Of a stretch of 64,000 bases of DNA, positions 15,950 through 64,000 are shown in pieces. The DNA comes from Macrostomum lignano (Eukaryota), in the NCBI GenBank assembly GCA_002269645.1, contig NIVC01000896.1, positions 279,487 through 343,486 of the forward strand, written 5' to 3'. A program made the position numbers and the translations under genes. The notes beneath the pieces were generated by a model. That model made no database searches and was not told the DNA's origin. It saw only the letters and a list, made by a program, of their open reading frames with translations. The first letter of the stretch is position 1, and every line of letters starts with the position of its first letter.

Positions 15950-16285
15950 GGAGGCTGTTTACCCTGGTGCACTTTAAATAACATTGTCACACAGCCCGGC
16001 GAGAGGCATTACTGCCCATTCCGCCAACTCCCCTGAGCAGGCACACAAGCGCGCGGATATGTATACAGTCATCCGCAAAGGCACACACTCACACATGGGT
16101 GTACAATGGCTTGGATTTAATAATTTATATCGCTTAGGCATGTACACTTCACTGTGTCTTGAGGTTGGCCCTTGAGGCCGTTACTTGCACGAGAGCAGAC
16201 CCAAGCTGCTGACTGCACTTGGAATCGAGTATGGGCCGCTGGCACATCAGAACGCCGCGTTAGGGCACAAGGCTACGGCCCCTAT
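15950..16285 (-). mobile_element. Putative tRNA-derived SINE
   Basis: The minus strand begins GGGCCGTAGCCTTGTGCC (A-box-like), followed by ACTCGATTCC (B-box-like), and ends in a GGGTAAACAGCC-type tail. No target-site duplication confirmed. Confidence 0.4.
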
Positions 16286-41439: not shown

Positions 41440-42200
41440 ATGCTTGCTATCAAAAGGACGCTTGCTCTTAGGGCATGCTTGATCGGGTGAGATTGCTAAG
41501 ATGTCAAGACATACTGGGGAATTATTCAGATATGCAGGCTTACTGGGGAATTACTGAGATTTCAAGCCTTAAAGGGACTTGCTGAGATGCCAAAGAAATT
41601 GCTGAGGTTTAAAGGCGTGGGGGAATTTCTGAGATGTCAGGCATTTGGACGGGGAGAAATTGCTAAGTTGTGAAGACCTACTGAGGAAATCACTGAGCCT
41701 TGACACCTCAGTTCATTCTCTCTTAAGCTTTGACATCTCAGCAATTCGCTCTCAAGGCTGAAGAGGGACTTTCTGAGATGCCAAGGCTTGGTGGGGGGAT
41801 TGCTGAGATGTTAAGGCTTGGGGGGATTTCTGAGATATAAAGGCTTAATAAGGGAACTGCTGGCGTCGGGGGGGGGAATTTCTAAAATGTCAAGGCTTGG
41901 GGGAATCGCTGAGATGTTAGGTTTTGGACGGGGAGAAATTGCTAAGATGTCAAGACTTACTGGGGGAATCACTGAGATATAAAGGCTTACTTGGAGGACT
42001 GCTGAGATGCCAAGGCTTACTGGGGGAATCACTGAGATATAAAGGCTTACTTGGAGGACTGCTGAGATGTCAAGTCTTGGCGGGGAAATTCCTAAAATTT
42101 CAAGTCTTGAGAGCGAATTGCTGAGATGTCAAAGCTTAAGAGAGAATTACTGAGGTCTCTAGGTTTGGGGGGAATTGTTGAGATGTCAAGTCTTGGGGGG
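41440..42200. repeat. Degenerate 27-bp satellite block, mostly reverse orientation
   Basis: Repeated GCTGAGATGTCAAG and GGGGGAATT units from the same family as 2580-3950. Confidence 0.85.
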
Positions 42201-44230
42201 GAATTCTGTGGATTGGGGATTCCTTCCATGAGGGCTGCTTCTAATGGATATCTTTAGATAGGTGATTCATTGGGAAATTACATCGATGCGGGGTTCTTTC
42301 GATGGAGGTTTCTTTGAATGGGGGATTCTATAGATGAAAGATTCTTTCGATAAAGGGATCCTTTGAATATGATGGGATTGTTTGGACGGGGATTCTTTAG
42401 ATGAGGGGATTCTTTAGCCCAGGATTTTATTGATGGGGGATTATTTGGACGGGGGATTCTTTGGATTCTTTGGATGGAGATTTTTTGGAGTATGATTCTT
42501 TGGATTATTTGGACGGGGTTCTTTAGATGAGGGGACTCTTTGGCCAATGCTTCTTTTGATGGAGGTTTATTGAGATGAGTGTATCTTTGCATTATTTTGA
42601 TCGGGATTCTGTGGATGGGGATTATTTGGATTGGGATTCTTTGGAGGGGGATTTTTCGGATATGGATGGAGGTCGGGGATTCTTTGGATATGAATCGATG
42701 GGGTGATTCTTTGTATAGGGATGGATGTGGGGATAGGGATGGATCGGGGGATAGGGATGGATGTGGGGATAGGGATGGATGGGGGGATAGGGATGGATCG
42801 GGGGGGTTCTTTGGATAGGGATGGATGGGGGATTCTTTGGATATGGATGGATGGGGGGATAGGGATGGATCGGGGGGATTCTTTGGATAGGGATGGATGG
42901 GGGATTCTTTGGATATGGATGGATGGGGGATTCTTAGGATAGGGATGGATGGGGGGATATGGATGGATCTGGGGAATTCTTTGGATAGGGATGGATGGGG
43001 GATTCTTTGGATATGGATGGATGGGGGATTCTTTGGATATGGATGGATGGGGGATTCTTTGGATATGGATGGATGGGGGATTCTTTGGAAATGGATGGAT
43101 GGGGGATTCTTTGGATATGGATGGATGGGGGATTCTTTGGATATGGATGGATGGGGGATTCTTTGGATATGGATGGATGGGGGTTCTTTGGATATGGATG
43201 GATGGGGGGTTCTTTGGATATGGATGGATGGGGGATTCTTTGGATATGGATGGATGGGGGATTCTTTGGCTAGGGGATTCTGTCGATGGGGGATTCATTG
43301 GAAGGGGAATTCTTCGGATCGGGGATTCTATCGATGGGGGTTCTTTGGATGGGGATTCTCTGCATGTAATATTCTATGGATGGGCAATTTTTCAGATAGG
43401 AGGAAGGAGGATTCATTCAATGGGGAATTCTTCGGATCGGGAATTCTATCGATGGGAGGTTTTTTTTGGATGGGGGCTTTTTGCATGTGAGATTCTTTGT
43501 ATCGTGGATTCTATGGGTGGTGGATTCTTTGAATGGGGGATTCTTTAAATTTGAGATTCAGTTGGGTGAAATTTTATTGCGTGGGAAAACTGTGGTTGGA
43601 GTTTGGACGGAAAGCCCCAACGGGGGTTGGAATTGGCTAGCTGAGGAAATTGTTTCACTAATCTTGGTGGGGGTACTTTCTATCAGGGGATGCTTGCTCG
43701 GAAGAGAATTCTAAGATTTCAAGATTTACAGGGGATTTATTGAAATGCACGTATAAAATCTTACCTATTGGAATTAATGAGATGTGAAGGCTTAAGAGGG
43801 ACTTGCTGAGATTATTTAGATGGGAGATCTATGGATTATTTAGATGGGAGATCTATGGATTATTTAGATGGGAGATCTATGGATTATTTAGATGGGAGAT
43901 CTATGGTTTATTTAGATGGGGATTATGATGTGAATTATTTGGATGGGGATTTACTGGGGGGGATTCTTTGGATTTGGATGGATGGAGGATTCTTTATATT
44001 TGGATTCTGTGGATGAAGGATTCTTTGGATGGGGATTCTTTAGATAGGGGGCTTCTGTAGATCGGGGATTTCTTGAGTAGGGGATTCACTGAATGGGAAT
44101 TATTCGGATCGGTGATTCTATCGATGGGGGTTCTTTGGATGGGGATTCTTTGCATCGGGGATTTTGGGGATGGGGAAAACTGTGGTTGGAGTTTGGACGG
44201 AAAGCCCCAACGGGGGTTGGGATTGGCTAG
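42200..44230. repeat. GGAT-rich satellite (GGGGATTCTTTGGATATGGATGGATG)n with a 24-bp sub-array at 43808-43925
   Basis: Strongly strand-asymmetric tandem repeats. They explain the Gly/Trp- and Pro/His-rich pseudo-ORFs. Confidence 0.9.
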
Positions 44231-47666: not shown

Positions 47667-49505
47667 ATGTCCGATTTTACTTGCTCTTAATGTGGTCATC
47701 AATTCAGCAAAGCAGCCAATTTGAACCGACATCTCGAAACGACTAGATGTGGTCGCTGCTCATCTGAATCGTCTGGAGCCTTCGCGCCTCCGAGAAACGC
47801 ACGAGAGGCGCTTCAGTTTCTTGCGGTCGGTGGTAAGTATGTGAAAGTTTTTTTGAACCCAAACCTTTTTCCACGAACCGCAAATGAGAAGGAGTTCAAA
47901 CGTATTTGCGGTCTTAGTTATAGTGATTTCGATAGCTTCTCAGAAATGTTACCAGAAGTATCTCGCCTTCGTATTTTGACAAAGCCGTCTCGAATATTTT
48001 TGTACCTGAAGAAGCTTCGCCAAGGTTGCAGCTTTCAATCATTAGCTTTCAATTTCAACATTTCTGCCCAAAGAGCATGCGACATTTTTAGGGAGATTGC
48101 CAAGGAGCAGTACCTACGGGATCCATATCAACCGAGGTCGATAGCGTCGACTCCGATTCAGACTCTGCTTGAGGAAAATGTAGTACGCGATCAATTTATT
48201 CTCGGTGTATTTCACACACTACTCAAAGGCAAGAAGCTTGTTCTTCTAGTGGGTGATCATACTTACTTTTATCTCCCTAAGAGCAGCTCACACCACACGA
48301 AAATTCGAACTTACTTTTCCGGCAAGAAAATGAATGTGAACAAAAAATGGCGGTTGTCAACAGTAGAGGAAAAGTTATCTACACCGCTCCCCTTACCGCC
48401 GCTATCTCGCCAACAATGGGCGATGGGAATTTGACTGCAATGCAAGTTGACATGGAGGCTGAAGGACTAATAGAGCCCACTTTGTTGCGCATTCTATGCT
48501 CTGTACAGAAAGATTATCACGGTATTGGCATTTTCGACAAAGGTTACAGCCACCAGCTTTGTTCACCAACTTCGGTTAACTTCCGCGACTTTATAGAGAC
48601 TAATAGTAAAGGCTGCACGACGCTTCTATTTCCGACCAGTCCAGGTGACCGAGTTCTAAACGAGCAGTTTGAATTTGTAAATAATGAGGCTCCTGTTGGT
48701 GACCGATCAATACCAGGAAAGCTTACATCAATCGAAGCAAATACAAGTCGCTGGGCTACGCTTTTCCGTTATCTCGTAGAATGTAGCTTTGCTGCAATCA
48801 AGCAAGACAAATGCATAAATGAGCGACAGGAGCCGTACCAATGGCTACATGCCCCAGAGTTTACCGAACGCAGCCGGTTCGGTGTTGTTATTGAAAACCC
48901 CATGGCAAAATTCAACCGTTCGCATCCAGGATTTCAAGCTACAAGGAGTCTGCCGCCGTCATGGTCAGATTGCTCCATGTTCGAATATGGACGGAACTTT
49001 GCTAAACGTCTTTTCATTGCGAATGAGCTAGACGAAATTGAGCAACTTGAGTACAATTGCGATTTGACTCGAATACCAACGAGTTCTACCCGAAAATGGA
49101 CAGCAGTGGATCCCCTGGACCCTGAAAGTTCAGGGTTCCCCAGCGTTGACGAAAGAAATCTGGAAGAGCTTAGCATCGGCCCATACCACGTTCTTCAGTC
49201 AAAACGCTACATCGAAAACGTCAGAGTTCATGAGGTGCTCAGTAGCTACGCTGGAGACTCGTGGCGCGATTTCGAATTGTTGATTTCTGAACTGCCAAGC
49301 CATTTAAAATGCTGGAAGTTTCATCAGCGAGCGCCACCAAAGGGGTGGAGCAGTAAGTTTGGAGAATGGAGGCCATCTTGGATATATTTAGCCGTTCTTC
49401 ATTCCCGTCATCGGTCAAAAACTTACCGAGTTGTCCTTCGTGTTTGCGAAACTGCAAGCGGTAACCGATTCGGATTTCGTGACTCATGGCTGCTGCGTCT
49501 GCATG
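47667..49505 (+). mobile_element. ISL2EU/Harbinger-like DDE transposase, disrupted and cut off by the Polinton
   Basis: N-terminal C2H2 finger (C.*CGHQF..NL.RH, stop at 47688), HTH (LRQGCSFQSLAFNFNIS), GDHTYFYLPKSS..FSGKK, IFDKGY and RYLVECSF. Frameshift near 48340. The reading frame runs into AGTAGT at 49506. Confidence 0.65.
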
Positions 49506-49830
49506 AGTAGTATAGAAAAAGACGCTTCTAGACCCAGAGCACTTTTTTAATGACCGTTTTAAGGGTCTAGAGGGGGGACACGGGGGGTAAATAAAAAAAC
49601 ACATCTAAACACCCTTAACACATCTAATCACCCATAATCACCCCTAACAATAAAAATCACTTCCCAACACTTCCAAACACTCCCCAACACCCCCCTCGCG
49701 TCCCCCCTCTTAAGACCTTACAAACGGTCATTAAAATAAGGTCTGATCTAGAAGCGTCTTTTTCTATACTACTACTCTATAACCCCTTGCCCGCGCCGCA
49801 GGCGCGAAGGGTCTTTTTCTGTTACTAAAA

Positions 49831-50145
49831 ATGACCCGAGTTTACACCTTTTCTGTTAGTGATACTTTTGAGACTGTTGCTAAAAATGCAGAGATAATAA
49901 AACAACATATTTTGAATGGAATAATTGATGAAGTTTATTTAAAATATGACGACAAGCACGACCTAAAACTTTATCCATTAGAGCTAGATGAGATGTATGA
50001 TTTAGAACAAGAGGGTGAGTTAATATTTCAACTTGGAGATTATTTAAATTCGGATGATTGGGAGGTTAGATCAACAGATTCCGAATCAACAAATAGTTCA
50101 TATGAAACCAGTGATTCAGAGAATGAAAGTGAAATTTTTATGTGA
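49831..50145 (+). CDS. Small acidic viral hypothetical protein
   Basis: 104-aa ORF with an AAAATG start and a D/E/S-rich tail. Confidence 0.55.
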   Translation: MTRVYTFSVSDTFETVAKNAEIIKQHILNGIIDEVYLKYDDKHDLKLYPLELDEMYDLEQEGELIFQLGDYLNSDDWEVRSTDSESTNSSYETSDSENESEIFM

Positions 50146-50161
50146 AAAAAATATTTAAAAA

Positions 50162-50386
50162 ATGAACTATTATTCTATAACAGAAACGACATTTATTGTG
50201 AAAAATATATATAAAAAAATGAAGGTAAACTATTCCTACATCGGAAATGTGCCGATTAATGAACTTAATGAAAATTTAAGTTTGATAACAGTTGAACAAA
50301 TGTCAATAATAATATTAGTAACAATTATAGTAATAATATTGTTTTTGTTTGTTATAAAAAATTTACTACCATGTTGTCTTAAGTAA
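50162..50386 (+). CDS. Small viral membrane protein
   Basis: 74 aa with a single hydrophobic segment (IIILVTIIVIILFLFVI) and an AAAATG start. Confidence 0.55.
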   Translation: MNYYSITETTFIVKNIYKKMKVNYSYIGNVPINELNENLSLITVEQMSIIILVTIIVIILFLFVIKNLLPCCLK

Positions 50387-50396
50387 CTGTTTGAAC

Positions 50397-52007
50397 TTAG
50401 TTCGCAGACATTATCTGGTTCTCATAAAAAGAACCCAATATTTCTTCACCATCCTTATCAGCAATTATATAGGTTGTAGGGTTTGTATTTAAAACTTTAC
50501 TGATGGTAAATTTCTCACTTATTTTCCAATATCCTTTTCTTCCCTTTTCAAACTTATCTTTCCATTTATAGATATAAACAGAATCACCAACCTTAAAACC
50601 TATAGTTTTCTTTTTTTCAAAATCTCCAAAAGTAACCCTAACGTTTTCAGGATTGTTATAAGCTTGTTGAGGAGTCATCTTTATCGCCGAATGATATGAA
50701 TTATTATAATCTTTCACTACGTCTGGTAATATTTTTACCCATTTTTGGTTACCATTAAGACTAAACTGAAACCACAATTTCTTACCTAAAGTTCTATTAA
50801 ATCTTTCTATTAATGCGTTTTTACTCTCTCCATAAATAGAATAAATTTTATTAATATACTCCCCATTCGCGTCCTTTTTCCTTTCTTGTCCTTTTTCAAA
50901 ATGATATAATTTATACATATGAGGATTGTAAAATTCTTTTCCTTCGTCAACACACAACCTTTCACTTTTTTCTCCAAGACTTCTAAAAGCAGCAGCAACA
51001 TCCTCTCCCTTTTTGGATTTTAAAGGAACAGCCCACGCGTATCGAGTAAAACCATCTAATATGGTTAAGATATATTTATATCCTCTTTCGTTCGGCATCG
51101 ACATTAAATCAGCATACCAAATTTCATTCTTTTTGAAGTTCATGATTTTTCTATAAAATTTAGGTTTTCGATATTCTTTATGAAGAATCTTTGCCTCATC
51201 AGAACTTAACCCGCCGCCACTTAACAACAAACACTCAACACAATTATTTCCATGTTGATTATAATTAATTCCTAAACCAAATTTAACTTTAGACTGCAAG
51301 ATCTTTTTAACCATCCACCTAGTTAATTTTTGACCTACCGATAATCCCTGCAAGTTATCTAATCCTTGAATCATTTTTTGATCGGCTTCATGTTTTAATC
51401 TTAATGCTTCCTCGGGTGTGTTCTTATCAGCATCTCTGTATGCTAAGTCATGATAGTATGCTAACCAATCAATTCCATTTATGGGAATTGAATCGGCTTT
51501 TGGGGTGTCATCAGGATTTAATCTCAAATCTAAGCGAGTGCCGGGTAGTTTACCCTCAATCTTTCGAAAGAGGCTGGAGCACACCTTAAGCGGCGATAAT
51601 TACCGCCCATCTCCGTCTGCTCTCTGAACCTTCTCCTTATATTTAAAATACTTAGGAGCTTGGCTGCGCATTGCCACCGTGTCTTCAAGCTTTTTACCTT
51701 TGGGAAGAGGAGTTACCTCTGTTCCTTCAAAAGATTTCTCAATTGAAGTGGTACTTGAAGCAGTATGACGGGTTTCACGCAATTTGGAGATGTCGCCACA
51801 AATAGTGACTAGCAAGGACATTGCCTTCCTCACTCAGGCCACGGGTTAACCTGTGAAGTTCATTGATGGTAGGTGTAGTTCCCCTGTATATTTACCAGTA
51901 GTAAAGATTGGTGGTAAGCTTGTTAATCCTTTTTGAACATCTAACAATCCTCCTTCAAACACTATTTGATCGTTCCGAAGGAACGCGAACTTCGTTCGGT
52001 TGCTCAT
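50397..52007 (-). CDS. PLA2-like domain fused to a retroviral-type integrase (~435 aa), split by a group I intron
   Basis: Exon 1 (52007-51849) ends GELHLPSMNFTG. Exon 2 (51545-50397) starts PGTRLDLRL and contains IDWLAYYHDLAY (PLA2 HD) and the integrase D-D-E motifs WYADL, LCVDEGKEF and LIERFNRTL. Confidence 0.85.
51546..51848 (-). ncRNA. Group I intron ribozyme, subgroup IC1, 303 nt, no ORF
   Basis: Core motifs P AAAUUGCGUGAAA, Q CAAUGCGCAGCCAAG, R GUUCAGAGAGCAGA and S CUUAAGGUGUGCUCC occur in order. Helices: P1 with U-G at the splice site, P3 CAUCUCC/GGAGAUG, P7 GAGCA/UGCUC, P8, P9 with a GAAA loop, and P5abc. Confidence 0.9.
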
Positions 52008-52557
52008 TTTTAATAGCCATAAAAATACATGATAGCACCAATTGTTTTGCAAACTCTTCAATGGTTGGTTGTTGAACTTTTTTATAGCGATTATCTACGC
52101 TAGTTAAGTATCTTTTATTTCTCCAATTTTCAGACTTTTTAATCTGATCATCGTCTTTGTAACTAAATGAAGAAGCAGGAATGAAATGATCAATATCTAA
52201 CTTTCCAGTATAATTTTTTGGAACATAATAATTTCTTGTGAAATTTAACCAATCAAAAAAGAATTCTTTTGTGCAACCAAGATATGAGATATAGTCCTTG
52301 TCATTAAAATTTTTCAACGCCCAATTTATTCTATTTCTAATTAAAACAATATGTTTGTAATTATCATCAGTGTGATACTTATTTTTTCTATATTCATTCC
52401 ATTTATCTTTATTGTTTTTTATCCAAATAGCAGATGAGGTATTATGACAAGATCGACAATCATTTCTAAATTTTTTTGAATCATTTCTCCAAAAATAAAA
52501 TTCTTTCGTCATCGGTTTTTCTTGTTTACACTTAGTACAAATCTTATTAGTTTCCAT
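51955..52557 (-). CDS. HNH-family endonuclease with an N-terminal CxxC/CxxC zinc module
   Basis: CTKC..CRSC, then YLGCTKEFF..LDIDHFIPASSF..ENWRN..SVDN, a pattern typical of phage and giant-virus HNH nucleases. Confidence 0.7.
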   Translation of the reverse strand: METNKICTKCKQEKPMTKEFYFWRNDSKKFRNDCRSCHNTSSAIWIKNNKDKWNEYRKNKYHTDDNYKHIVLIRNRINWALKNFNDKDYISYLGCTKEFFFDWLNFTRNYYVPKNYTGKLDIDHFIPASSFSYKDDDQIKKSENWRNKRYLTSVDNRYKKVQQPTIEEFAKQLVLSCIFMAIKNEQPNEVRVPSERSNSV

Positions 52558-52582
52558 TTTATAAAAAATAAATTTAACAATT

Positions 52583-53251
52583 AAACTCCAGTATGTCCAG
52601 CAGCTTTCGCAGCAGCTAAAACAAGTTTTCGCGGTGTTTTAAATCCATCACCAACAGCTGGTTTGTTATTTATAGAATTAACAATCCATTTATACAAGCT
52701 GGTATTTTTAACAGCTCCTCCTAACTCATCATAAAAAATTCTAGCACTTATTAATTCATCCCTAGTATATAAATCGGGTTAAATTTTACCCTAGGGTTCG
52801 TAATAATATTAAATGCTCCGCCCAATTCTCTATATAGTTCATTTCGATCTTTAACAACGTTACCAATTCGATAATTACCACCACCTAAATCTGTCACAGC
52901 AATACTAGTTGGTGCAGGTCTCGGATATTGATCAACTCCACCCCTAATCTCTTCACGTCTAATTTCTGCAACTCTAAATATTGCTTGATCAGTCTCATAA
53001 GCAGGCGGCTCATCCAAAATTTCATCCTCTTTTGGCTCCGTATTTTTAGCAATTTTTTCCAGAAGATCTTTATCTGTTTTTTCTAGTTCACTAATTTTCC
53101 CAGTAATAGGATTAACAAAAGGAGCAGCAAATCTTTCACCCGCTAATTGTATTCCTAACTTTCTTTTTTGTAAATTTCTAACAAAATCAGAATATCTTTG
53201 CTTCTCTTTATAAATCGCTAACTCTCCATCAACGTCCATAAATTGACTCAT
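52583..53251 (-). CDS. Polinton hypothetical protein (one frameshift)
   Basis: 166-aa ORF with an AAAATG start. A 1-nt shift near 52775 extends it to a stop at ~52583. Confidence 0.5.
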
Positions 53252-53285
53252 TTTTTAACATAAAAAACTTTTTTAACTTAAAAAA

Positions 53286-54758
53286 ATGGCTGAAACAAAA
53301 ACTATGTGGAGTGATAAATTTCATTTCAAAAAGCACCGACAGTATATTAATGAGGTCAGAGCAAGAGATTTAAATTATACCCTACCAACAAGTGATAATT
53401 CAAATAACTTTACTACTGGAACGGTAACTTTTGACATCGGCGCAACCAACACTATATTGGATATGAAAAATGCGTTTTTCCGCGTTAGATGGTTGTATAC
53501 TAGAAATGATGGAACTGCTCTTGCAGCCGGAGATATCGCAGATCGATCCGGAATAATAATAGAAAATGATTGGTTTTATAAATGTTTTTCCCAAGCTCAA
53601 CTAACTGTTAATGGTGCTGAGGTTGAGACATCATCAAACCCCGCAGAGATTAATGGAGTTTTGAAACATTTAAATTATACTTATTTATCAAAACAAGTTG
53701 GTGATAATGTTGGGTGGATGCCGGATAAAGGTAACGGTCAAGCAGTAGTTTTCCCTAATGTACAAAACGCAGCCGGTGCAGATACTGCAGCGCTAATTGT
53801 TTACCTTAATACAAACATAGTTCCAGTTGTAACCACTATGACTAATACAAAAGATATTAATACTGGTTTTATAGATCGTCAGAATAAATTCCCAGTCGCG
53901 GTTTTAACCACAGCAACAGCATATGAGCAGGACTTTTCAATCTTTCCACTATTTGGGTTCTTCTCACCAAATCGGGTATGGAAAGGATTAAAATTTGGGA
54001 TACAGTTGCAAATATCTGGTGGATATCAGCCTAGGATACTTTATGGAACCTCAATTTCAACCGATATAGCAGTTCGTATAGATTCAATTCAATTAGTCGT
54101 ACCAACTATTGAGGTAACAGCCCCACTTTTAAAACACATCGATAATCAGTTAACGCATGATCAGGAAATATTTTATTTGAATCGTCGACATTTTATGCGA
54201 ACCATTAATAACAATCAGGATTCATTCCAGTGGCAAATACTGACATCAAAACGTCGGGTGAGATATATTTTTGTTTGGTTTAAGATAACAAATAGAAGGA
54301 GTAAAAGAGCAAATGGGGATTTATATTGGCTTCAATCCGGTGCCATAGCAGCACAAGCAGCCACCGCAACAGACAATGCGGCTGCAGCTATTAACGAGTT
54401 TAATGTTCAGAATATCCGCCTGCAGGTTGATGATCAATATTATCCGGTTAAAGATCCTCTTAATCTAAATATTGCAAATAATAATGTTAATGATTTTATA
54501 AAATATTATCAAGATTATGCCAAAAATGAAGCGTATGCCGTCCCTCAGTACACACCCACAGAGTTTCTAAACATCCATCCAGTGGTTGTTTATGATCTAA
54601 CGGCACAGAAAGAAAACGTAGCCAATATTGGACTTAATTATATGTTAGAGATTAATAAAACCGGTAATCAGGCACTTGACGCCCACGTATTGTTTCTAGA
54701 GGAATATATGTCAATTGCTAAAGCTGATGGCACGATTGTTAGGGACGCGCCGCTGTAA
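53286..54758 (+). CDS. Major capsid protein (double jelly-roll, Polinton type)
   Basis: 490 aa, beta-rich, with the motif TVTFDI..LDMKNAFFRV..CFSQAQLTVNGAEVE. It lies next to the ATPase and penton genes. Confidence 0.8.
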   Translation: MAETKTMWSDKFHFKKHRQYINEVRARDLNYTLPTSDNSNNFTTGTVTFDIGATNTILDMKNAFFRVRWLYTRNDGTALAAGDIADRSGIIIENDWFYKCFSQAQLTVNGAEVETSSNPAEINGVLKHLNYTYLSKQVGDNVGWMPDKGNGQAVVFPNVQNAAGADTAALIVYLNTNIVPVVTTMTNTKDINTGFIDRQNKFPVAVLTTATAYEQDFSIFPLFGFFSPNRVWKGLKFGIQLQISGGYQPRILYGTSISTDIAVRIDSIQLVVPTIEVTAPLLKHIDNQLTHDQEIFYLNRRHFMRTINNNQDSFQWQILTSKRRVRYIFVWFKITNRRSKRANGDLYWLQSGAIAAQAATATDNAAAAINEFNVQNIRLQVDDQYYPVKDPLNLNIANNNVNDFIKYYQDYAKNEAYAVPQYTPTEFLNIHPVVVYDLTAQKENVANIGLNYMLEINKTGNQALDAHVLFLEEYMSIAKADGTIVRDAPL

Positions 54759-54807
54759 GCGGCGCAGGTCTCCGACCGTCGCCCCTATTTAAATTATTTC
54801 TTTAAAA

Positions 54808-55558
54808 ATGGTAAAGGCAAAACACGATAAGATATTTCCAAATGATCCTTTTCTTTGTTTAGTAATTGGTGGGTCGGGTAAAGGAAAAACACACTTTGTT
54901 TATGACCTGTTAACAACAGATGGAATGTTAGACTATAATAATTTAATAATTTATACTAATAAACCTAGAATAAAATATTATGAATTTCTTAAACATGGAT
55001 TAAAAAACAAATTAAAAAAAGATGTCTTGTTTAGAATGTTAAGAGCATATGAGCAATATGAGGATGATGACGAACCGCGATTTAATCTAGCAGACATTGA
55101 GGATTTATGTAAAACAATGGCACAACAGCCAGAAAACATCACCGATCGCCCCGAAGGGTCGCGGACTTCGTCCGATCGCGCCCAACTGTTAGAGTATCAA
55201 CCCGATTAGCCTATGATCAAATTCCAAAACATGATAAAACACTAATTATTTTTGATGATTGTATTAATGACGGTGATCAAGAATTGCAAAAGGAAATTTT
55301 TGTTAGTGGTAGAGGAGATGGAATTGGAGCTTTTTATCTAACACAGTCTTTAGAGAATTAGAATCGATTATAAAAAAGAATGCAAGTTGTTGTGTAATGT
55401 TTGATTTAGATAATTATGATTTACAAAATATTCACGCGAGATTTAATCCCGGATTGGATGCAAAACCATTTAAAAGTATGTGTAAAAAAATTTGGGATGA
55501 TAGCCAATACAAACATATTTATATCAATCCGAGGTTAGAAAGGAAAATCGAATCTTAA
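54808..55558 (+). CDS. A32/FtsK-like packaging ATPase (two frameshifts)
   Basis: Walker A GGSGKGKT. In the shifted frame come Walker B LIIFDD and VSGR..FYLTQS. Shifts near 55170 and 55348. Confidence 0.85.
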
Positions 55559-55610
55559 CAAATTTGATAAAAGAAGATAATGAGGAAGAAGAATAATTCC
55601 CACTATAAAA

Positions 55611-56396
55611 ATGACTACAAATTTAAATACTATAAAACAATTGGTAGATCGAACTAATTCAAAATTTAGTACAACATTACAGTTTATAATGACAACCAGC
55701 GAGCAACGGATTCAATTGCGCGATCCATTACAACTTGATCAAAGCCTAAGTTATCAAATAGGTTTAATACTATTTTCGGTTTTCAACATGCCTCAATTAA
55801 TTAATGCAACAAATAATCAATTTAGATATTCTAAAGATTCCGGAGCCAATTGGACAACATTTAGCGTTAACCCAGGAGCGTATAGCTATACTGATTTGAA
55901 TGCTTATATAGAAGGAGAATTAACAACTAATGGTGATTGGGTAGCAGGAGCAATTGTTATAGGTGTTGATTTACCGTCTGGCAGATTCACACTATCACTA
56001 GGATCCGGATATCAGGTTGATTTCACAATTGCAAATTCACTCAGAACCATACTTGGATTTAATTCCCGAATAGTTACCACATCAAGCACCGGTGATACAG
56101 TTGGAAATATAGAGGGTGGAGTAAATACAATTAATATAACAACCGACATATCAAACGGTGGTTATATAACAGACGATAACGGAGTTTTGGTTCAACGTGG
56201 AATTATTTATTCAATCCCATTTCTTGCTGTTCCAATTGGAGAGAAAATGATTGTATCACCTCAAACCCCAATATATTACCCATTAAATCAATATAATGTT
56301 CAATCAATTTATATTAGGATTGTAGATGAAAGCGATAGATTAATAAGTTTTGGTGGGCAGTCAATAACAGTGATTTTACGTATAAAACAGGTTTAG
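55611..56396 (+). CDS. Minor capsid (penton) protein
   Basis: 261 aa with NSLRTILGF, SPQTPIYYPL and IRIVDESDRLISFGGQSITVILRIK, typical of the Polinton single jelly-roll mCP. Confidence 0.85.
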   Translation: MTTNLNTIKQLVDRTNSKFSTTLQFIMTTSEQRIQLRDPLQLDQSLSYQIGLILFSVFNMPQLINATNNQFRYSKDSGANWTTFSVNPGAYSYTDLNAYIEGELTTNGDWVAGAIVIGVDLPSGRFTLSLGSGYQVDFTIANSLRTILGFNSRIVTTSSTGDTVGNIEGGVNTINITTDISNGGYITDDNGVLVQRGIIYSIPFLAVPIGEKMIVSPQTPIYYPLNQYNVQSIYIRIVDESDRLISFGGQSITVILRIKQV

Positions 56397-56406
56397 TACT
56401 GTAAAA

Positions 56407-56616
56407 ATGGGTAATCGAACAACATGTTCGCGTGCAAAGCACGATAATAATAATAATTTAATAAAAAAACAATCAGAAAAAGTTAAAAAAGCTGAAGATA
56501 ATTACGAACTAGAACTAGCAAAATTAAGGCAGTTACAAGCTGATAAAATAAGAAAGGAATTGTTAAAACCCACACCTACGAAACTAACTAAAACCAAGAG
56601 TTTTTCAGGAACATAA
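56407..56616 (+). CDS. Small basic viral protein starting MGNRTT
   Basis: 69-aa ORF with an AAAATG start, tightly packed between the penton and protease genes. Confidence 0.55.
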   Translation: MGNRTTCSRAKHDNNNNLIKKQSEKVKKAEDNYELELAKLRQLQADKIRKELLKPTPTKLTKTKSFSGT

Positions 56617-56617
56617 A

Positions 56618-57058
56618 ATGACCATGACGTGGGATGATTTTAAACAAAGATATGGAACAGACACAACAAGCAATATCGAATTAACAAATTGGGCGAGGCA
56701 GTTAAAAATAAAACCATTCAGATGTGTTATGCGAGATGAGATCAAAGACTTACCACAATATGGATGTTTCATTGTTAATATTGAAACAACAAAAGAAAAT
56801 GGTGTTCATTGGTCAGCAGTTTATTCAAAACCAAAACTTGTTTATTTTTTTGATTCATACGCGCTTCCTCCGTTACAGGAAATAAAAGACAAATTTAATC
56901 ATACTAAAAATCGTTTATGTGGAGATCATCACGAACAATTTCAAACCTTTGATAAAAGTTATTGCGGGCAAGCGGCGTTGTATTTTTTATATCGACTTTC
57001 GAATGAAGCTCGTGTAAACCCCGAAGTATTTAAGACTATTTTAGACTCTATAAAATAG
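56618..57058 (+). CDS. Adenain-like cysteine protease
   Basis: Catalytic H-D-Q-C set in GVHWSAV, FFDSY and QFQ..SYCG. Confidence 0.9.
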   Translation: MTMTWDDFKQRYGTDTTSNIELTNWARQLKIKPFRCVMRDEIKDLPQYGCFIVNIETTKENGVHWSAVYSKPKLVYFFDSYALPPLQEIKDKFNHTKNRLCGDHHEQFQTFDKSYCGQAALYFLYRLSNEARVNPEVFKTILDSIK

Positions 57059-57068
57059 ACAGTAAAAA

Positions 57069-59120
57069 ATGTTATTTTCTGGAACACCCTCATGGAACGG
57101 AACAACAAGTAGTGGTGGTGGTGGCACATCTGGTGGAATAAGTGTTACATTTGGAGATAATCGATATATTAATGAGGATGAAGGTTATAAAAAAACTGAA
57201 ATTGATAATAAATTAAATTTAAAAAGAAATGTTGCAGATTCCTATACCAAAACTCAAATAGATGATTCACTAAATCTGAAACGGAACGTAGCCGATTCCT
57301 ATACCAAAACCGAAGTTGATAATTCATTAAATTTAAAACGCAATACAGCCGATTCCTATACCAAAACAGAGGTTGATAATTCATTAAATTTAAAACGCAA
57401 TACAGCCGATTCTTATACCAAAACCGAAGTTGATAATTCATTAAATTTGAAACGGAACGTAGCCGATTCTTATACCAAAACCGAAGTTGATAATGGATTA
57501 AATTTAAAAAGAGATGTAACTGATTCTTATTCTCGAACTGATTCTGATTCACGTTATGTTCAAACCACCGCAACCGGAAACCTAGATATGAGCAACAACC
57601 GAATTATAAATGTTTCAATTACAACTAGTGATTCAGTGGTTGATAAGAACTATGTCGATAATCAAGTTGCCACTCGTAGTGGTAATATTAATATGAATAA
57701 TTTTAAATTAACAAATTTATTATTTGGAACAGAGAACGCAGACTCGATAACTCTAGGCCAAGTAAACGAGCGAGCTAATGCAACCGACGCCGATATTTTT
57801 ACCACGCCGCTTACATCAAATACTTCAAATCCTGATGTTGTTCTTACAGCATCTGAAAATGGCAACACAGCTTTTCGAGTTGGAGATGGAAGCCTTGCGA
57901 CACAATGGTCACCAAATACCGGAACCACAACCAATATGGAAATTCAATTTGAATTTTTAGGTTATAATAGAAGAATATTTGAATTAAGAATTACAGGCAG
58001 TGAAACAATTGAGATACCCTCGGGGTGGTCGGTTCGCGCAAAAAATGTTGCTACCGATTCATGGACGACATTAACTACGTCGGGATCACCAGTTCAAGCA
58101 ACATCATTTGCTCTATCTAATTTAACGACTAATTTTTGGAAATATTATAGCGTATTCTTCCCAACTGGTGGTACCGGTACACAACCTATCGAGGTTCGTC
58201 AAATACAATTATTTGAACACCGTGTTGAAATTCAAGATCTTAATTGGCCAACTCAAATACTTTCTGCAGTTCCGCGAGCGTACGTAGATCAGCTAGCTAC
58301 TCCAACATCAAATGGTAGAATGTCTGGAAGCGATAAAAATAAATTGGATGGAATACCTGCTATTGATGCGGCCTTGTTCGAACCAGTAATTTGCAATTGG
58401 TCTGGATATCAAAATCCAACAACCGCCGGAGATATATATCCAGTCGGTTCTTTAATTGGTGACGCTTCTTATATCGATTATCAAAATGGAGCTAGAATTA
58501 CTCGTGAAACCGCAGTGTAAGTGGGCTTTACAATTAATTTCACACATTTTCAAAATATATCTGCGTCTTTCTTTTTCCGAGTTGCTAATGCTACAGGAGA
58601 TGGTGCAGATGCGGTTTGGTTTTATGCATACTGTCACCAACGTCCAACATCGGAATTTGGACTGGATTATCAACCGACGCCGGATTGATAGTTTTTGCAA
58701 GTGAGTGGCATGATAGGTTTGGAGTTGTTTGGAGTAATAAAAAATCAGACGGATCTACGGTTCGTAACGATGTTAGTAGTGATGCGGATCAAACTGTAGC
58801 CTATGCTAATATTGATAACGGCGATTGGCATTTTTTGAATTAATATTTTAAATCAAAGGGTTTGGTACCGATTACAGTCATACAATGTTGCTGGTGATTC
58901 TTTTACCCTCATTGGACAGAACGTTTTCACATATGATAGTGGAACTTGGGGAACTTTAGATAAATCTGGAACCCTTATGGGTTTTGGTGCTCGAACTGGT
59001 GGAGCGGATGCTGCACATTTTATTCGTGGTGCGTTGTATGTGGTAGTACGTCGTTTGGTTATGTTTTTCCCTCTACTGCTTATTTGGAAAAACCTCCTAC
59101 TCAAATATAAAATATTTATA
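57069..59120 (+). CDS. Fibre/spike-like protein with 19-aa repeats, a discoidin-like domain and a frameshifted LamG-like C-terminal part
   Basis: Six units of LNLKRNxADSYTKTEVDNS, then GNLDMSNNRIINV and GDGSLATQWS..PSGWSV. Broken frames beyond 58520 include DNGDWHF. The region after 58520 may be a separate gene. Confidence 0.6.
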
Positions 59121-59122
59121 TA

Positions 59123-60428
59123 CGAGGGACACTCCAAAAGTTTTGCAATTCAACCACTTGCGCAAGTCGCACAATCTTCAAAATCAACCCTCTGTACAAT
59201 AAACATGTACATAGTCCCCACCTCAATTTTTTAGTAATTTCATACATATATGCCTGCTCAGCCCCCAGTCAAAGTCAGTGACTCCTTAACCTGTACTGCT
59301 GCGGCCATGGAATTTGAATCGTGAGCAGAATCGGCTACTAATTTGGTACTGCCACAAGCGAAAGCTCACGGCGCTTGAGACTCATGCCGAGCTACTAGCA
59401 ACATTGGAGGCTCAAGCACCGTCATATGCTACGGTTACACGCTGGTACCGCGAGTTCCAGGCCGGCAGGACCAGCTTTTCTGACGACCCCCGGCCCGGGA
59501 GACCTCCGACAGCAGCGACGGAGGAAAACATCGCTGCAGTGCAGGAGCTGATCCATCAGGATCCGCGAATCACCACGGACACGTTAGCTATGAATGTTGG
59601 CATCGGATCGGCAGCGGTCGATACGATTCTACACGATCACCTCAGAGTCAGGAAGCTTTGTGCCCGATGGATACCCCACATCCTGACAGATGCTCAGAAA
59701 CAGGCCCGCATGGAGTTCTGTCAGTTTCTCATCGATCGATATGAGCACGGGAGCCATCAGCGCCGCTCTGAAGTCATCACTGGTGATGAGACGTTTCTCT
59801 ATCATTTTGACGTCGAGACAAAGCGCAGCAGTGCAGAGTGGGTGCCGGAAGGTGGGCAACGACCCCTGAAAGCAAGGCGGTCCCGGTCCCAGGGCAAGCG
59901 ATGTTTGCCATCTTCTTCGACTCACAAGGCGTGGTGGCGATGGCGAAGCTGGAGGGTCAAGCTACAGTCACTGCTCGATGGTAACTGAAGAGTGCTTGCC
60001 TGTCGTGATCGACAGCGTGACCCAGAGGGCACCAAGGACGGAATGCGAGGGCGGAAGCTTCACCATGACAACGCCCCCGCCCACACACGGCTGCTGCAAC
60101 TCGAGCGTTCCTGGACCAAGAGGGCATTGCAACGTACCACACCGCCCTACTCACCAGACCTCGCCCCCTGCGACTTCTGGCTCTTTCCAGAAATCAAAAA
60201 GTCGCTTAGGGGTGCAGGTTTCAGTCCGACGAGGAGCTGGAGCAGGCGGCGAAGGAGGCGACTGACGGCATCCCAATTGAAGAGTTCCAGGGCCTCATGA
60301 ACAAGTGGCTCGGAAGAGCGCACAAGTGTTTGCAGTTCCGCGGGAGCCTACTTTGAAGGATTGTAATAGAAAAGTTTAGCAGAATTAACTTTAAATAGTC
60401 GAATTGCAAAACTTTTGGAGTATCCCTC
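59123..60428 (+). mobile_element. Mariner (DD34D) transposon with a frameshifted transposase, inserted in the Polinton
   Basis: TIRs GAGGGACACTCCAAAAGTTTTGCAATTC / GAATTGCAAAACTTTTGGAGTATCCCTC with TA flanks. Motifs WIPHILT, ITGDET, HHDNAPAH and YSPDLAPCDFWLF. Confidence 0.9.
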
Positions 60429-60443
60429 TAAAATTTGTATAAA

Positions 60444-60770
60444 ATGGCTTTTAGTAGAACTCCATCGATGCGGCAAAATAATGTTATTATTCCTATTCCT
60501 AAACAAGAATCAAATATAAAAACATTCAAATCTCATACCAAATTTTTATTTAGTACTGTAAATGTTCAGGATAATAAGAAGCTTCAAGAATTAATTAAGT
60601 TATTAAAAAATCATATTATACTTCAAGAGTTTTGGAAAATAGGATTTAAATGGGAGAAAAAAGAAAGAATCACTCCAATACAATACCTATTGAGCTCCGG
60701 GCAAATACCCAAAGAGCGCGGGGAATTCATTTTGGTGCTATTAAAAATAGACGAGAATGTCGGTATCTGA
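60444..60770 (+). CDS. Viral hypothetical protein
   Basis: 109 aa from an AAAATG start. Confidence 0.5.
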   Translation: MAFSRTPSMRQNNVIIPIPKQESNIKTFKSHTKFLFSTVNVQDNKKLQELIKLLKNHIILQEFWKIGFKWEKKERITPIQYLLSSGQIPKERGEFILVLLKIDENVGI

Positions 60771-61400
60771 AGCAGATAAATGGGAACGCGACCGGTTCAA
60801 CCAACGTAAAGGTCAGATGTTAAGTAATGTTGATCGAATAAACTATGATTATGATTTATATGCTAAAAAAGTAAGAAGAGTTTCAAACCATATAAGAAAT
60901 ATGGACTTTTTCAATATTGGATTTGGAAGCTTATCAATGTTATGTGTAATCGTTTTAGGTATTTTACAATCTATTCCAACTCTTAATTTATCTCAATTAT
61001 TTTTAGGTATTTCAATTGGCTCAATATCAGGTTTTGAATTGATCAGAACTTATCAATACTTTTAGCAATTAAATTATATCTTAAAAAAAGAAAGGAAAAA
61101 TATAAATCATTAAGAGATTGCCAAGCAATATAAAAATCATTATATTTATATGTGCAAAAAATATTGGATGACGGAGAGATAACGATTCATGAATTATCAA
61201 CCGCGGTTGAGTTATATGAAAAATATTTAAAAGATAGAAATAGAATTTTAGATGTTGAAACTTTTACCGATATGGAATTAAAAGAGTTGAGACTCGATAA
61301 ACCCAAAGCTCCACCTATAGAAACATTAGGTATTTACGAACCTGAAACTATTGCTACTGGGGCACAAAGCCCGCGGTCAGGAAGTGCTGTAGAACTTTCA
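60757..61400 (+). CDS. Two-TM Polinton membrane protein (GasderminX-like), frameshifted
   Basis: Two hydrophobic segments, then in a shifted frame KILDDGEITIHEL..YEKY, which resembles the LxDGxIxxxE..KY motif I recall from this family. Confidence 0.5.
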
Positions 61401-62828
61401 TGTTGTTTAGTTTTTCTAATGCATATGTTATATATTCTTTCCCAAAGTGGTAACTCTCTTCTGATCCTAGGTTTAAATTTTTTATCAATACATAAAAATT
61501 CTAATGACTTTTTCAATAACATTTCGTTAGGTATGTTACCAATCCTTATAAACTTTGTATTCTCTCGAATAAGAAAATTGAAATAATATCCAACTAAAAT
61601 TAAAATCCTTTCGGAGTCTTTCGAACTTAATCCCTTTCCTTTATTTAAATGGAAAAAGTTATTATATAAATAAACATTATTTCCGGAATTAAAATTGGAT
61701 CAGAAATGTCTCTTGTAAGATTTCTTAAAATTGTGTTTTAAAATAGTAATATGAGTTTTCAATCTTTTTTGTTTTTTCAAATTGATATATTTTAGAACAT
61801 GAATAACACATATGATATATATTCTCCGTTTGCTGTTTGCCCTCTGTGCATAGTCACATTACATTTATTACAAACATAAATGTCTTTCATTTTTTTGTTA
61901 TTTTTTTAGATTAAAAATGGAAGCTGGTTCAAAACCGATTCTAATGTGATTAATTATCTCACACCCAATATGTTGGAGAATAAAGAATATAATATTATAT
62001 GTTTGAGACAGGTTAAATTTATTGGGCTTCAATCAATATTTTTACAATTAGATGGGCAAAAATTTTATGTCTAAGCGGAGATGATGTTAAAAATTTTCCT
62101 GTTTTAGTTATTAATAAACCTAAAGCGTTTGTTATGAAATACTGCAACGAGGGTGGATTGCAATTTAAACTAAAACAAACAAATAATAAAAAGAGTGATA
62201 GGACTGTAAAATTGGCGGCTGTTTGGGAGGATGACGACGAAGACTAAATTTTTTATAAGAAAATGGATACGATAAAAATCCTTATCACTAAAGAGCGTGA
62301 ACTTAATGATATTAATAAAAAAAAAATATAATTATATCTCAGAAATATCATGAGTATGGGGACGATATGTTTCCCATCCGATATGAAATAGATAAAAGAA
62401 AACGTTTTTTAATCTGCAGATTGCTTTATGCTGAAAATAGTAATTGAAATTGAAATAGATAGGTTGGTTAGAAAAATAAAAAAACTTAGGAAAAAAATAA
62501 AGGATTGTTTAAGTTACCCTGACGACTGCGAGGAAATTGGCCTTCAATAATATATGAAATCGAAATGGATATTTATGCTAAACAATTACATGCTTTAGTT
62601 TTTTTACGAAGGGTCGCGACGATAAGTAATTTTTCTGTTAATCTCTTCCAGTTATTCAAGACTTTTTCCTTATTTAATTTTTTAAGTTCTTTTGGAAATG
62701 TTGAATAATAATTATCTATATCTTTTTCATATTCTAGAAATGTATTATATTCACAATCACATTCGATTCACAATCACAATCGTAATAATAATTATTTATT
62801 GCCGCTTTGTATTCATTATATTTACTTA

Positions 62829-64000
62829 TTATATCTTCTTTTTGTTTTTTATTTTTATCATATTTTTTATCTCTTCTTTTAAACCATATGGATATGTTTT
62901 AATTTTATCATCTAAATATCTTTTATCATCAAATGGACTTAATGTTTTTTTATCTGTCTCGATGACAAACATCTGATGCTTATCTGAATTTAATCGATAT
63001 TGTGGAGCATGATAATTTTCAATTGTATTAAGGTAATCTAAAAGTACGTTTTTATAATCATCAAATGTTATCTTTTTTACTGCTGCTCTTGATACCCCTT
63101 TTATTTTTTTTACCTCTCCCTCCTGTCCTAAAACCTTAAATGCATAGCATTTTGATCTTATTGCTATAAACTCGGTTATGATTTTGCTATTTAATTCATC
63201 TTTCATTTTAAGTACAACTTTTTTATTTTGATCTGATTTTAAAGGATGGTTATCCGGATAGTCGGAGGTATCCAATGTATCCTTAATTTTTTCCATATCT
63301 TTATAGACATCGAACCTTTGGTTCGCGGACTGCCCGTCCATCTGTTTCAACCTTAAATACCAAACTGTCGGTGTCTGCATATATTGGATAGTTATCTGGC
63401 CATGTTTTTTTATAACATCATAATAGTATTCATACATTACCAGCTTTGCAAAATCTAAAAACAACCATTCAATAAATATTGGTTTAAGAAATTTTGTTGT
63501 TTTATTTCTCATATGAATACCCATAAAGTTATCATCAAATTTTATAAAGTCTTTAAAGTTAGGTTTTGAGAAATATTTCTTTGCTTTATCAATATCCTTT
63601 TCTAAATGGAATTGGGTTCTATCTCTAATATTTTCAACCGTTTTTCCATAAAAAGCATTATTCATTAATTTCCAATAATCTTTCTCAAAATTTGTTTTTG
63701 ACATCTGTCTCTGATTTGAATTAAATCAATTATATTTAGCTAACCAATCTTCCTCAATAAACGATATTGTTCGATGTACTTTGTACACTTTTAATCCCTG
63801 TTTTCATAAAATTGTAGAAGCTTTATAATGCACTACATAGTTTTTCTTATCATGTAAATTTAATATTAATTTTTTTTGTGCTAGATGTTTTGCATTATCT
63901 ACTTTAGATAATCTTTTTGTGTTTGTGATAAATCATCTTCATTAACTGAACAATGCTCTGGAGCTAAAGGTATTTATATGTTTTTTGCTTTTGCTTCCCG
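62829..64000 (-). CDS. Protein-primed DNA polymerase B, C-terminal part (frameshifted; N-terminus outside the window)
   Basis: KLMNNAFYGK, YADTDS in a shifted frame, IAIRSKCY, KIKGV and LSPFDDKRY. Upstream fragments read KLILNLHDKKNYVVHY. Confidence 0.92.

What the first reader, a model, noticed from the sequence alone, without database searches (positions are those of the whole stretch)
51546..51575. The intron appears to end in omega-A instead of the near-universal omega-G
Seen: the frame-restoring 3' splice site follows ...AAACUA. The CU before this A (51548-51547) can pair with the AG right after P7 (51575-51574) as P9.0. The downstream exon CCCGG partly pairs with the IGS as P10 (4 of 5). 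The G-binding pair in P7 (G-C next to the bulged A) is unchanged. Established: the terminal G is required for the second splicing step; omega-A is, to my recollection, known from stony-coral mitochondrial ND5 introns. Inference: this is a natural variant needing assisted splicing, an inactivating mutation, or a sequence error.
Basis: partly seen in the sequence, partly recalled or inferred. Interest (0 to 1): 0.72.

Follow-up and report, generated by a model that had tools for sequence, protein, structure and literature searches.

The report
Viral-element group I intron ending in A
A self-splicing intron in the integrase gene of a virus-like element buried in a eukaryotic chromosome really ends in A instead of the usual G, but five of its six relatives at the same site end in G and the element is decaying, so it is most likely a recent point mutation, not a new kind of intron.

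Summary
Window 51848-51546 (- strand) is a 303-nt group I intron (Rfam RF00028, 62.1 bits, E 5.7e-15). It has a U.G 5' splice site, an intact P7 G-binding pair, a 2-bp P9.0 and a 4-of-5 P10. Its last base, 51546, is A.

Removing it joins NFTG|PGTRLD, the calcium-loop motif of a phospholipase-A2-like domain fused to an rve integrase. Twenty uninterrupted homologues read straight across this junction without a gap. No nearby G gives an in-frame product that keeps the motif.

I found six homologous introns at exactly the same codon boundary in related metagenomic elements. Five end in G and one in U, and that one also has a damaged core. Related introns in giant-virus capsid and RNA-polymerase genes appear to end in G too. 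So A is a derived change in this copy, not a family trait, and the G-binding pair has not changed to match it.

The element lies in a eukaryotic chromosome. Its packaging ATPase and DNA polymerase are broken and a decayed mariner sits inside it. The best reading is a neutral or disabling G-to-A substitution in a degenerating endogenous copy. A still-functional omega-A intron and a base-call error are not excluded. Interest is modest.

The parts
51849..52007 (-). Exon 1 of the PLA2-like/rve integrase gene (53 codons, ends ...NFTG). The intron begins UAA, so unspliced RNA would give only a 53-aa peptide.
   Evidence: The N-terminus aligns with homologues.
51546..51848 (-). Group I intron, 303 nt, with no ORF. 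It looks like the Tetrahymena type (IC1): P2, P2.1 and a P5abc extension.
   Evidence: Rfam 62.1 bits; structure and covariation; minimum-energy fold reproduces P2-P9.
51546..51546 (-). Omega position, the last intron nucleotide. It is A here. At the same alignment column it is G in L001, L002, L009, L010 and L012, and U in L011.
51835..51853 (-). P1 and P10 region. Exon strand 51853-51849 (CAGGU) pairs with the guide sequence at 51839-51835, with U51849.G51839 at the splice site. Intron nt 5-9 (51844-51840) form P10 with exon 2 bases 51545-51541.
   Evidence: Read. P10 covaries: exon +3 C pairs with G in the window, and A pairs with U in L001.
51576..51624 (-). P7 (5' strand 51624-51618, 3' strand 51581-51576), enclosing the P3 3' strand (51614-51608) and P8 (51606-51590). 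G-binding pair G51622-C51577 lies next to bulged A51623.
   Evidence: P7 is 100% paired in 8 introns, 3 pairs covary, and the G-C pair is invariant.
51547..51575 (-). P9.0 (A51575-U51547, G51574-C51548) bracketing the P9 hairpin (51573-51554).
   Evidence: P9.0 covaries among sisters: AG/CU, AU/AU in L002, AC/GU in L012.
50397..51545 (-). Exon 2 (PGTRLD... through the rve integrase core to the stop codon). The reading frame is intact.
51955..52557 (-). Free-standing HNH-type endonuclease ORF just upstream, overlapping the first 17 codons of exon 1. It is homologous to the HNH ORF carried inside the sister intron of L009; L010 carries a similar HNH ORF (by eye).
   Evidence: 34% identity over 116 aa, E 1e-14; PHROG endonuclease VII / HNH.

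Best explanation
This is a genuine Tetrahymena-type group I intron. It is inserted between the G and P codons of the Y-x-G|P-G calcium loop of the phospholipase-A2-like domain of a polinton-like-virus integrase gene.

Its ancestor ended in G. This copy has a single G-to-A transition at the omega position and no compensating change in the G-binding pair of P7.

Expected behaviour (inferred from Tetrahymena-type introns):
- Step 1, attack by exogenous G at the U.G site, should proceed.
- Step 2, exon ligation, needs the terminal G docked on the P7 G-C pair. It should be strongly slowed, so little or no PLA2-integrase mRNA is made.
- P9.0 and P10 are intact and could still guide a trickle of correct ligation.

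The copy sits in a eukaryotic chromosome and its neighbouring genes are already broken. The change is therefore most likely a neutral or disabling lesion in a degenerating endogenous element, not a selected variant.
For: - Five of six homologous introns at the identical codon boundary end in G: L001 ...GAACUG|CCAGGU, L002 ...UUAAUG|CCCGGU, L009 and L010 ...CUG|CC, L012 ...AAGUG|CCAGGA. They share one alignment column.
- The closest intron, L001 (78.7% identical core, identical P7 and P9), has G.
- Related introns in a giant-virus capsid gene and an RNA-polymerase gene appear to end in G as well, with splice sites inferred from the reading frame.
- The G-binding G-C pair is invariant and unchanged here.
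- A precedent for decay exists in the family. L011 is 94% identical to L009, has lost the ORF, and has omega U plus broken P3 and P7 pairs.
- The element is degenerate. In the ATPase, Walker A, Walker B and the C-terminus lie in three different frames, with a GC-rich insert. The polB has two in-frame stops, and two frameshifts put YADTDS out of frame. A mariner with 36-nt terminal repeats and a fragmented transposase lies inside the element.
- The flanks are eukaryotic: a LINE, a Tc1-like element and a Harbinger-like element.
Against: - Apart from omega the intron looks fully functional. All 59 assigned pairs are standard, although 29 paired positions differ from L001. P9.0 and P10 are kept.
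- The 435-codon spliced frame has no stop or frameshift. The capsid, penton-like, protease-like and fibre-like ORFs are also open.
- The lesions are concentrated in the ATPase and polB. General decay is therefore slight in this part of the element, and a hit exactly on omega by chance is a priori unlikely.
- Omega-A introns that splice correctly in vivo exist (PMC6545197).
- No splicing data and no reads were available.
Confidence: 0.6

Rival explanations
1. Functional omega-A variant. The intron still splices at 51849|51545 in vivo, with the 3' site fixed by P9.0 and P10 and perhaps a protein helper, as in the hexacoral ND5-717 intron. The A is tolerated or even useful, for example by suppressing 3'-site hydrolysis and circle formation.
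For: - The core is intact: 59 of 59 assigned pairs.
- P9.0 and P10 are kept, and they covary among sisters.
- Both exons form an intact reading frame.
- ND5-717 ends in A yet gives perfectly ligated exons in vivo (PMC6545197). The idea that omega-A prevents 3'-site hydrolysis is proposed in PMC8146996.
- A second ORF-less sister, L011, has also lost omega-G.
Against: - The A is unique to this copy; five of six same-site sisters have G.
- There is no compensating change at the G-binding pair.
- The other non-G copy, L011, has a damaged core.
- The element's ATPase and polB are dead, so there is little to select for.
Confidence: 0.2
2. Base-call or assembly error. The genome really has G at 51546.
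For: It is a single base, and no reads or second assembly could be consulted. The 1-nt frameshifts in the ATPase and polB could hint at imperfect consensus quality.
Against: - Substitution errors are rare in finished consensus sequence, and a hit on this exact base is improbable.
- polB also carries in-frame stop codons, and the element contains a decayed mariner. These are real biological decay, not consensus noise.
Confidence: 0.12
3. The 3' splice site is mis-assigned: the intron really ends at a nearby G.
For: G residues lie at 51553-51555 (P9 3' strand) and at 51541-51542 in exon 2. Cryptic 3' sites are known to be used when the terminal G is mutated (my own knowledge of Tetrahymena mutants, not checked here).
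Against: - The only in-frame G sites insert GKL into, or delete PGTRLDL from, the invariant calcium loop. The others shift the frame.
- Uninterrupted homologues fix the junction exactly.
- The omega column, P9.0 and P10 line up across seven same-site introns.
Confidence: 0.03

Closest known systems
Tetrahymena-type (IC1-like) self-splicing group I introns, Rfam RF00028
   Same: - P1-P10 architecture with P2/P2.1 and a P5abc-like extension.
- U.G at the 5' splice site.
- P7 of six pairs with a bulged A next to the G-binding G-C pair.
- 2-bp P9.0 and a P10 (compare PMC10020454).
   Different: The last nucleotide is A, not G. The host gene is a protein-coding viral integrase gene, not rDNA. The subgroup call rests on visual resemblance only; I ran no formal subgroup test.
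Hexacoral mitochondrial ND5-717 group I intron (natural omega-A)
   Same: It ends in A while keeping a compact group I core. It is the only well-documented natural omega-A case I could confirm (PMC6545197, PMC8146996).
   Different: ND5-717 is obligatory and vertically inherited. Its omega-A is described as a feature of the hexacoral intron, and it splices in vivo. Here the A is confined to one copy among G-ending sisters, the intron family is patchy and mobile, and splicing is untested.
Group I introns reported in polinton-like viruses of protists (PMC12220804)
   Same: That survey found RF00028 hits in endogenous polinton-like viruses of Paulinella, Desmodesmus and Rhodomonas. Some were 309-376 bp introns 'within genes encoding a short ~50 aa protein', which fits exon 1 here (53 codons, with the intron opening on UAA).
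   Different: The survey gives no splice sites, host-gene identity or omega state. The link to the PLA2-integrase calcium loop is my inference, and I could not obtain those sequences.
Free-standing homing endonuclease beside an ORF-less intron ('collaborative homing' in phages; Bonocora and Shub 2009, recalled and seen only in a reference list)
   Same: An ORF-less intron with a related HNH gene lying free just upstream of the interrupted gene.
   Different: No cleavage site or mobility was tested, and this is a eukaryotic virus-like element rather than a phage.

Membership tests
Group I intron (RF00028) | Match to the covariance model above the curated gathering score | tested here: met
   62.1 bits against a gathering score of 50, E 5.7e-15; sister L001 scores 65.3 bits.
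Group I intron (RF00028) | Conserved core helices P3-P8, with P7 forming the G-binding site (G-C pair next to a bulged nucleotide) | tested here: met
   59 of 59 assigned pairs are standard in the window. Across 8 introns 90.3% of cells are paired and 37 pairs change on both sides; P7 is 100% paired.
Group I intron (RF00028) | U.G wobble pair at the 5' splice site in P1 | tested here: met
   U51849.G51839, with four Watson-Crick pairs upstream. The same arrangement is seen in L001, L002, L009 and L011.
Group I intron (RF00028) | Terminal guanosine (omega-G) at the 3' splice site | tested here: not met
   A at 51546. G in five of six same-site sisters.
Group I intron (RF00028) | Self-splicing activity | not testable with these tools
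   No transcript data or biochemistry were available.
Natural omega-A introns of the ND5-717 kind | Omega-A conserved across the lineage that carries the intron | tested here: not met
   Only the window copy has A; the sisters have G or U.
Natural omega-A introns of the ND5-717 kind | Correct exon ligation in vivo despite omega-A | not testable with these tools
   Shown for ND5-717 (PMC6545197); no data for this locus.
PLA2-like + rve integrase of polinton-like viruses | PF08398 and PF00665 domains in one protein, with a Y-x-G-x-G loop and an HD..Y motif | tested here: met
   The spliced product hits PF08398 above its cut-off (29.5 against 23.9 bits, residues 43-127). It hits PF00665 at 32.4 bits, just under the 32.6 cut-off. 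1169 homologues were found, most with both domains. H85, D86 and Y89 are invariant.
Mobile intron carrying its own homing endonuclease | Endonuclease ORF inside the intron | tested here: not met
   The window intron is 303 nt with no ORF. Sisters L009 and L010 carry an HNH ORF, and L001 carries a different 233-aa ORF. A related HNH ORF lies free upstream in the window.

The most novel reading that the evidence does not exclude
Loss of omega-G is not random decay but a recurrent, selected end state of ORF-less introns in this family. It happened independently to A here and to U in L011. One version: an omega-less intron that does step 1 but ligates poorly could hold the PLA2-integrase of an endogenous element silent, or make it depend on a helper factor, for instance one supplied during giant-virus infection. 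Another version: omega-A blocks 3'-site hydrolysis and circle formation, as proposed for ND5-717.
Probability: 0.08. Interest if true: 0.65.

Novelty: new member of a known kind. Interest (0 to 1): 0.3.

Why it matters
By itself the omega-A is most likely one lesion in a dying endogenous virus copy, and it teaches little that is new about ribozyme chemistry.

Two things give it some value.
- It is a natural G-to-A change at omega in an otherwise pristine, Tetrahymena-like core, with a G-ending sister only about 21% diverged. That is a clean natural pair for asking how far P9.0 and P10 alone can carry the second step.
- Checking it exposed an uncharacterised intron family that targets one codon boundary in the calcium loop of the PLA2-integrase gene of polinton-like viruses. 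The family has relatives in giant-virus capsid and RNA-polymerase genes. Every stage of the invasion-decay cycle is visible: copies with an endonuclease, copies without one, a decayed copy, intron-free genes, and a free-standing endonuclease.

This may also explain the 'short ~50 aa protein' genes reported to hold group I introns in Rhodomonas elements. They could be exon 1 of the integrase gene.

Tried and rejected
- The whole-window Rfam scan at gathering threshold found nothing. The intron appeared only in a focused scan. No second intron exists in 49500-64000 at E<0.1, and there is no second copy of this intron in the window.
- A protein-guided search of viral contigs gave no relatives.
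- A 3'-end pattern scan of viral contigs returned only an RNA-polymerase intron (L016).
- A second protein search, seeded with the intron read-through peptide, found no further intron-bearing gene calls. P0122 looked like a read-through, but it is an uninterrupted, mutated loop.
- The truncated homologues P0021, P0033 and P0036 are cut short for other reasons; their GPG/GAQ junction is uninterrupted.
- Exact look-ups of two window proteins found no record, so no paralogous copies from the same genome could be examined.
- Alternative G-ending 3' sites were rejected on frame and motif grounds.
- I did not identify the source organism. I judged a further whole-database search not worth its cost.
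- The supplement of PMC12220804 held no intron table as text.

Full report
**What is at the coordinates.** On the - strand the window reads ...NFTG codons (AAC UUC ACA GGU) | UAACCCGUGGCCUG ... GUGUGCUCC AG CCUCUUUCGAAAGAUUGAGGG UAAACUA | CCC GGC ACU CGC....
- A focused Rfam scan places a complete group I intron at 51555-51858(-): 62.1 bits, gathering score 50, E 5.7e-15.
- The whole-window scan with fast filters had missed it.
- It is the only such match in 49500-64000 and the only copy in the window.

**Splice sites.**
- The 5' site follows U51849. This U pairs with G51839 at the end of a P1 made of exon CAGGU and intron GCCUG.
- Removing 51848-51546 (303 nt) joins a 53-codon exon 1 (from ATG 52007) to exon 2 (51545-50397). 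The result is a 435-aa open frame.
- The product hits the phospholipase-A2-like family PF08398 at residues 43-127, across the junction, above its cut-off. It hits the integrase core PF00665 at 32.4 bits, just under the 32.6 cut-off.
- Of 1169 homologues, most have both domains.
- The closest, P0001 (70% identical), is uninterrupted and reads NFTGPGTRLE.
- In an alignment with 20 uninterrupted homologues the junction has no gap, and G53, T56 and L58 are invariant.
- The ligation point is therefore fixed independently of any RNA model, and the last intron base is A51546.
- In-frame alternatives after a G would insert GKL (after G51555) or delete PGTRLDL (after G51525). Other nearby Gs shift the frame.

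**Structure.** I assigned P3, P4, P5, P5a-c, P6, P6a, P7, P8, P9.0 and P9 on the window sequence.
- All 59 pairs are standard pairs.
- On an alignment of eight related introns, 90.3% of cells pair, against 36-50% when partners are slid by 1-3 columns. 37 pairs change on both sides, and no shuffle out of 500 reaches the observed values.
- The structure was drawn from the window sequence, so the window's own perfect score is partly circular. The covariation across the other seven sequences is not.
- P7 is G51624, bulged A51623, then GAGCA against UGCUC-C. The G51622-C51577 pair is invariant in all eight, while three other P7 pairs covary.
- P9.0 is A51575-U51547 and G51574-C51548. Among sisters it covaries: AG/CU, AU/AU in L002, AC/GU in L012.
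- P10 is 4 of 5 and covaries too: exon +3 C with intron G here, A with U in L001.
- A plain minimum-energy fold recovers P2, P2.1, P3-P6, P8 and P9.

**Sister introns.** Gene calls that began inside an intron, or right after one, led to homologous introns at exactly the same codon boundary.
- L001 ends ...GAGGGAGAACUG|CCAGGU.
- L002 ends ...UUUAAUG|CCCGGU.
- L012 ends ...CUAAGUG|CCAGGA.
- A pattern scan of metagenome contigs added three more: L009 ends ...GUUCUG|CCAGGA, L010 ends ...UUCCUG|CCUGGA, and L011 ends ...AUUCUU|CCAGGA.
- At the omega column the count is therefore G in five, U in one and A in the window.
- L001 is the closest core (78.7% identical, with identical P7 and P9) and has G.
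- The same intron family also sits in a giant-virus capsid gene (L004-L006) and in RNA-polymerase large-subunit genes (L008, L016). Judged from the reading frame, those copies end in G.
- G is the ancestral state, and the A is a single transition on the window's lineage.

**Is it decay or a working variant?** For decay:
- The element is endogenous. The flanks carry a LINE (reverse transcriptase plus endonuclease), a Tc1-like transposase and a Harbinger-like ORF.
- The AT-rich viral part starts near 49.8 kb.
- The packaging ATPase has Walker A, Walker B and its C-terminus in three different frames, with a GC-rich hairpin insert.
- The polB fragment has two in-frame stops, and two frameshifts put YADTDS out of frame.
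- A mariner with 36-nt terminal repeats and a fragmented transposase sits inside the element.
- The family shows a decayed precedent. L011 is 94% identical to L009, has lost the endonuclease ORF, has broken P3 and P7 pairs, and has omega U.
- Nothing has changed at the G-binding pair to accommodate an A.

Against decay:
- The window intron differs from L001 at 29 paired positions yet has no broken pair.
- The spliced frame is intact.
- The capsid gene aligns over its full length with relatives.
- Lesions cluster in the ATPase and polB, so neutral divergence in this part of the element is small, and a hit on one particular base is a priori unlikely.
- The hexacoral ND5-717 intron shows that omega-A can coexist with accurate splicing in vivo (PMC6545197, PMC8146996).

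**Mechanism (inferred).**
[quoted passage not shown] P9.0 and P10 align the 3' site (PMC10020454).
- With A at omega and an unchanged G-C site, step 1 should be normal.
- Ligation should be strongly impaired. This is my recollection of Tetrahymena G414 mutants and of the Been and Perrotta adenosine-site experiments, which I did not check here.
- Unspliced RNA stops at the UAA that opens the intron and gives a 53-aa peptide.

**Probabilities.**
- About 0.6: a neutral or disabling lesion in a degenerating copy.
- About 0.2: a tolerated or functional omega-A intron.
- About 0.12: a base-call error.
- About 0.03: a mis-assigned 3' site.

**Comparison with what is known.**
- It fails one classical group I feature, omega-G, and meets the others that could be tested.
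- It is not of the ND5-717 kind, because the A is not conserved in its lineage.
- Group I introns in polinton-like viruses have been reported only as Rfam hits (PMC12220804).
- That paper's note of introns 'within genes encoding a short ~50 aa protein' fits exon 1 here, so the same insertion site may be widespread and unrecognised.

**Verdict.** The omega-A is derived and most likely a lesion. Interest is modest at 0.3. The intron family and its endonuclease arrangements are the more useful by-product. I neither printed nor assembled the viral element as a whole. No step needed referral.

Noticed in passing
window 51955-52557 (-): A free-standing HNH-type endonuclease ORF ends 106 nt upstream of the intron insertion site and overlaps the first 17 codons of exon 1. 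It is 34% identical over 116 aa (E 1e-14) to the HNH ORF inside the sister intron of L009, and L010 carries a similar one by eye. This looks like an endonuclease gene that has left the intron or never entered it, as in 'collaborative homing'.
   Followed up: partly
window 54808-55560 (+): The A32-type packaging ATPase is broken. A GC-rich hairpin insert at about 55145-55185 is flanked by GATCGC direct repeats and shifts the frame. A second 1-nt frameshift lies near 55350. The insert occurs only once in the window.
   Followed up: partly
window 62701-64000 (-): The protein-primed-type DNA polymerase B fragment is a pseudogene. It has two in-frame stops upstream of the NAFYGKT motif, and two frameshifts leave YADTDS in a different frame from its flanks. 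The listed 291-aa ORF stays open through the scrambled stretch only by chance.
   Followed up: partly
window 59124-60428: A mariner-like element with 36-nt terminal inverted repeats (89% complementary) and a transposase split over at least two frames is inserted inside the AT-rich viral element.
   Followed up: partly
L004-L006 (IMG/VR contigs of 132, 5.9 and 101 kb), L008, L016, L007: The same intron family (shared P5abc sequence) interrupts a giant-virus major capsid gene after MGGG, and RNA-polymerase largest-subunit genes at the NADFDGDEMN motif. L007 holds two copies and L005 three. This suggests intron exchange between giant viruses and polinton-like viruses.
   Followed up: partly
L011 759-1035; L009 260-1479: L011 is an ORF-less, 94%-identical derivative of the HNH-bearing L009 intron. 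It has omega U, a base lost from the P7 5' strand and two broken P3 pairs. This is a second, independent loss of omega-G in an ORF-less copy.
   Followed up: partly
L003 1290-1310: In this homologue the codons from ...GFIW to ...GT(RLD) are missing, exactly around the intron site. This may be an imprecise intron loss.
   Followed up: no
L001 776-1477; L013 1469-1948: The L001 sister intron carries a different 233-aa ORF in P2.1 with no PHROG match. L013 has an Eco47II-like restriction-endonuclease ORF just upstream of its integrase gene. Several unrelated nuclease genes appear to associate with this locus.
   Followed up: no
window 57069-58520 (+): A fibre-like ORF contains about five tandem 19-aa repeats (ADSYTKTEVDNSLNLKRN...). 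The underlying DNA repeat also shows up as inverted-repeat matches to 61186-61220.
   Followed up: no
window 49506-49773: A 270-bp hairpin-like inverted repeat (27-nt arms 100% complementary, inner 43-nt arms 77%) lies at the boundary between host-like DNA and the AT-rich element. It could be a terminal structure or a small foldback element.
   Followed up: no
window 11924-21546 (+); 27639-30754 (-); 37507-38781 (-); 42001-44000: The host part of the window holds four tandem single-exon caspase-domain ORFs, a LINE (reverse transcriptase plus endonuclease) and a Tc1-like transposase. A 2-kb stretch has extreme GC skew (+0.63). The source organism was not identified.
   Followed up: no
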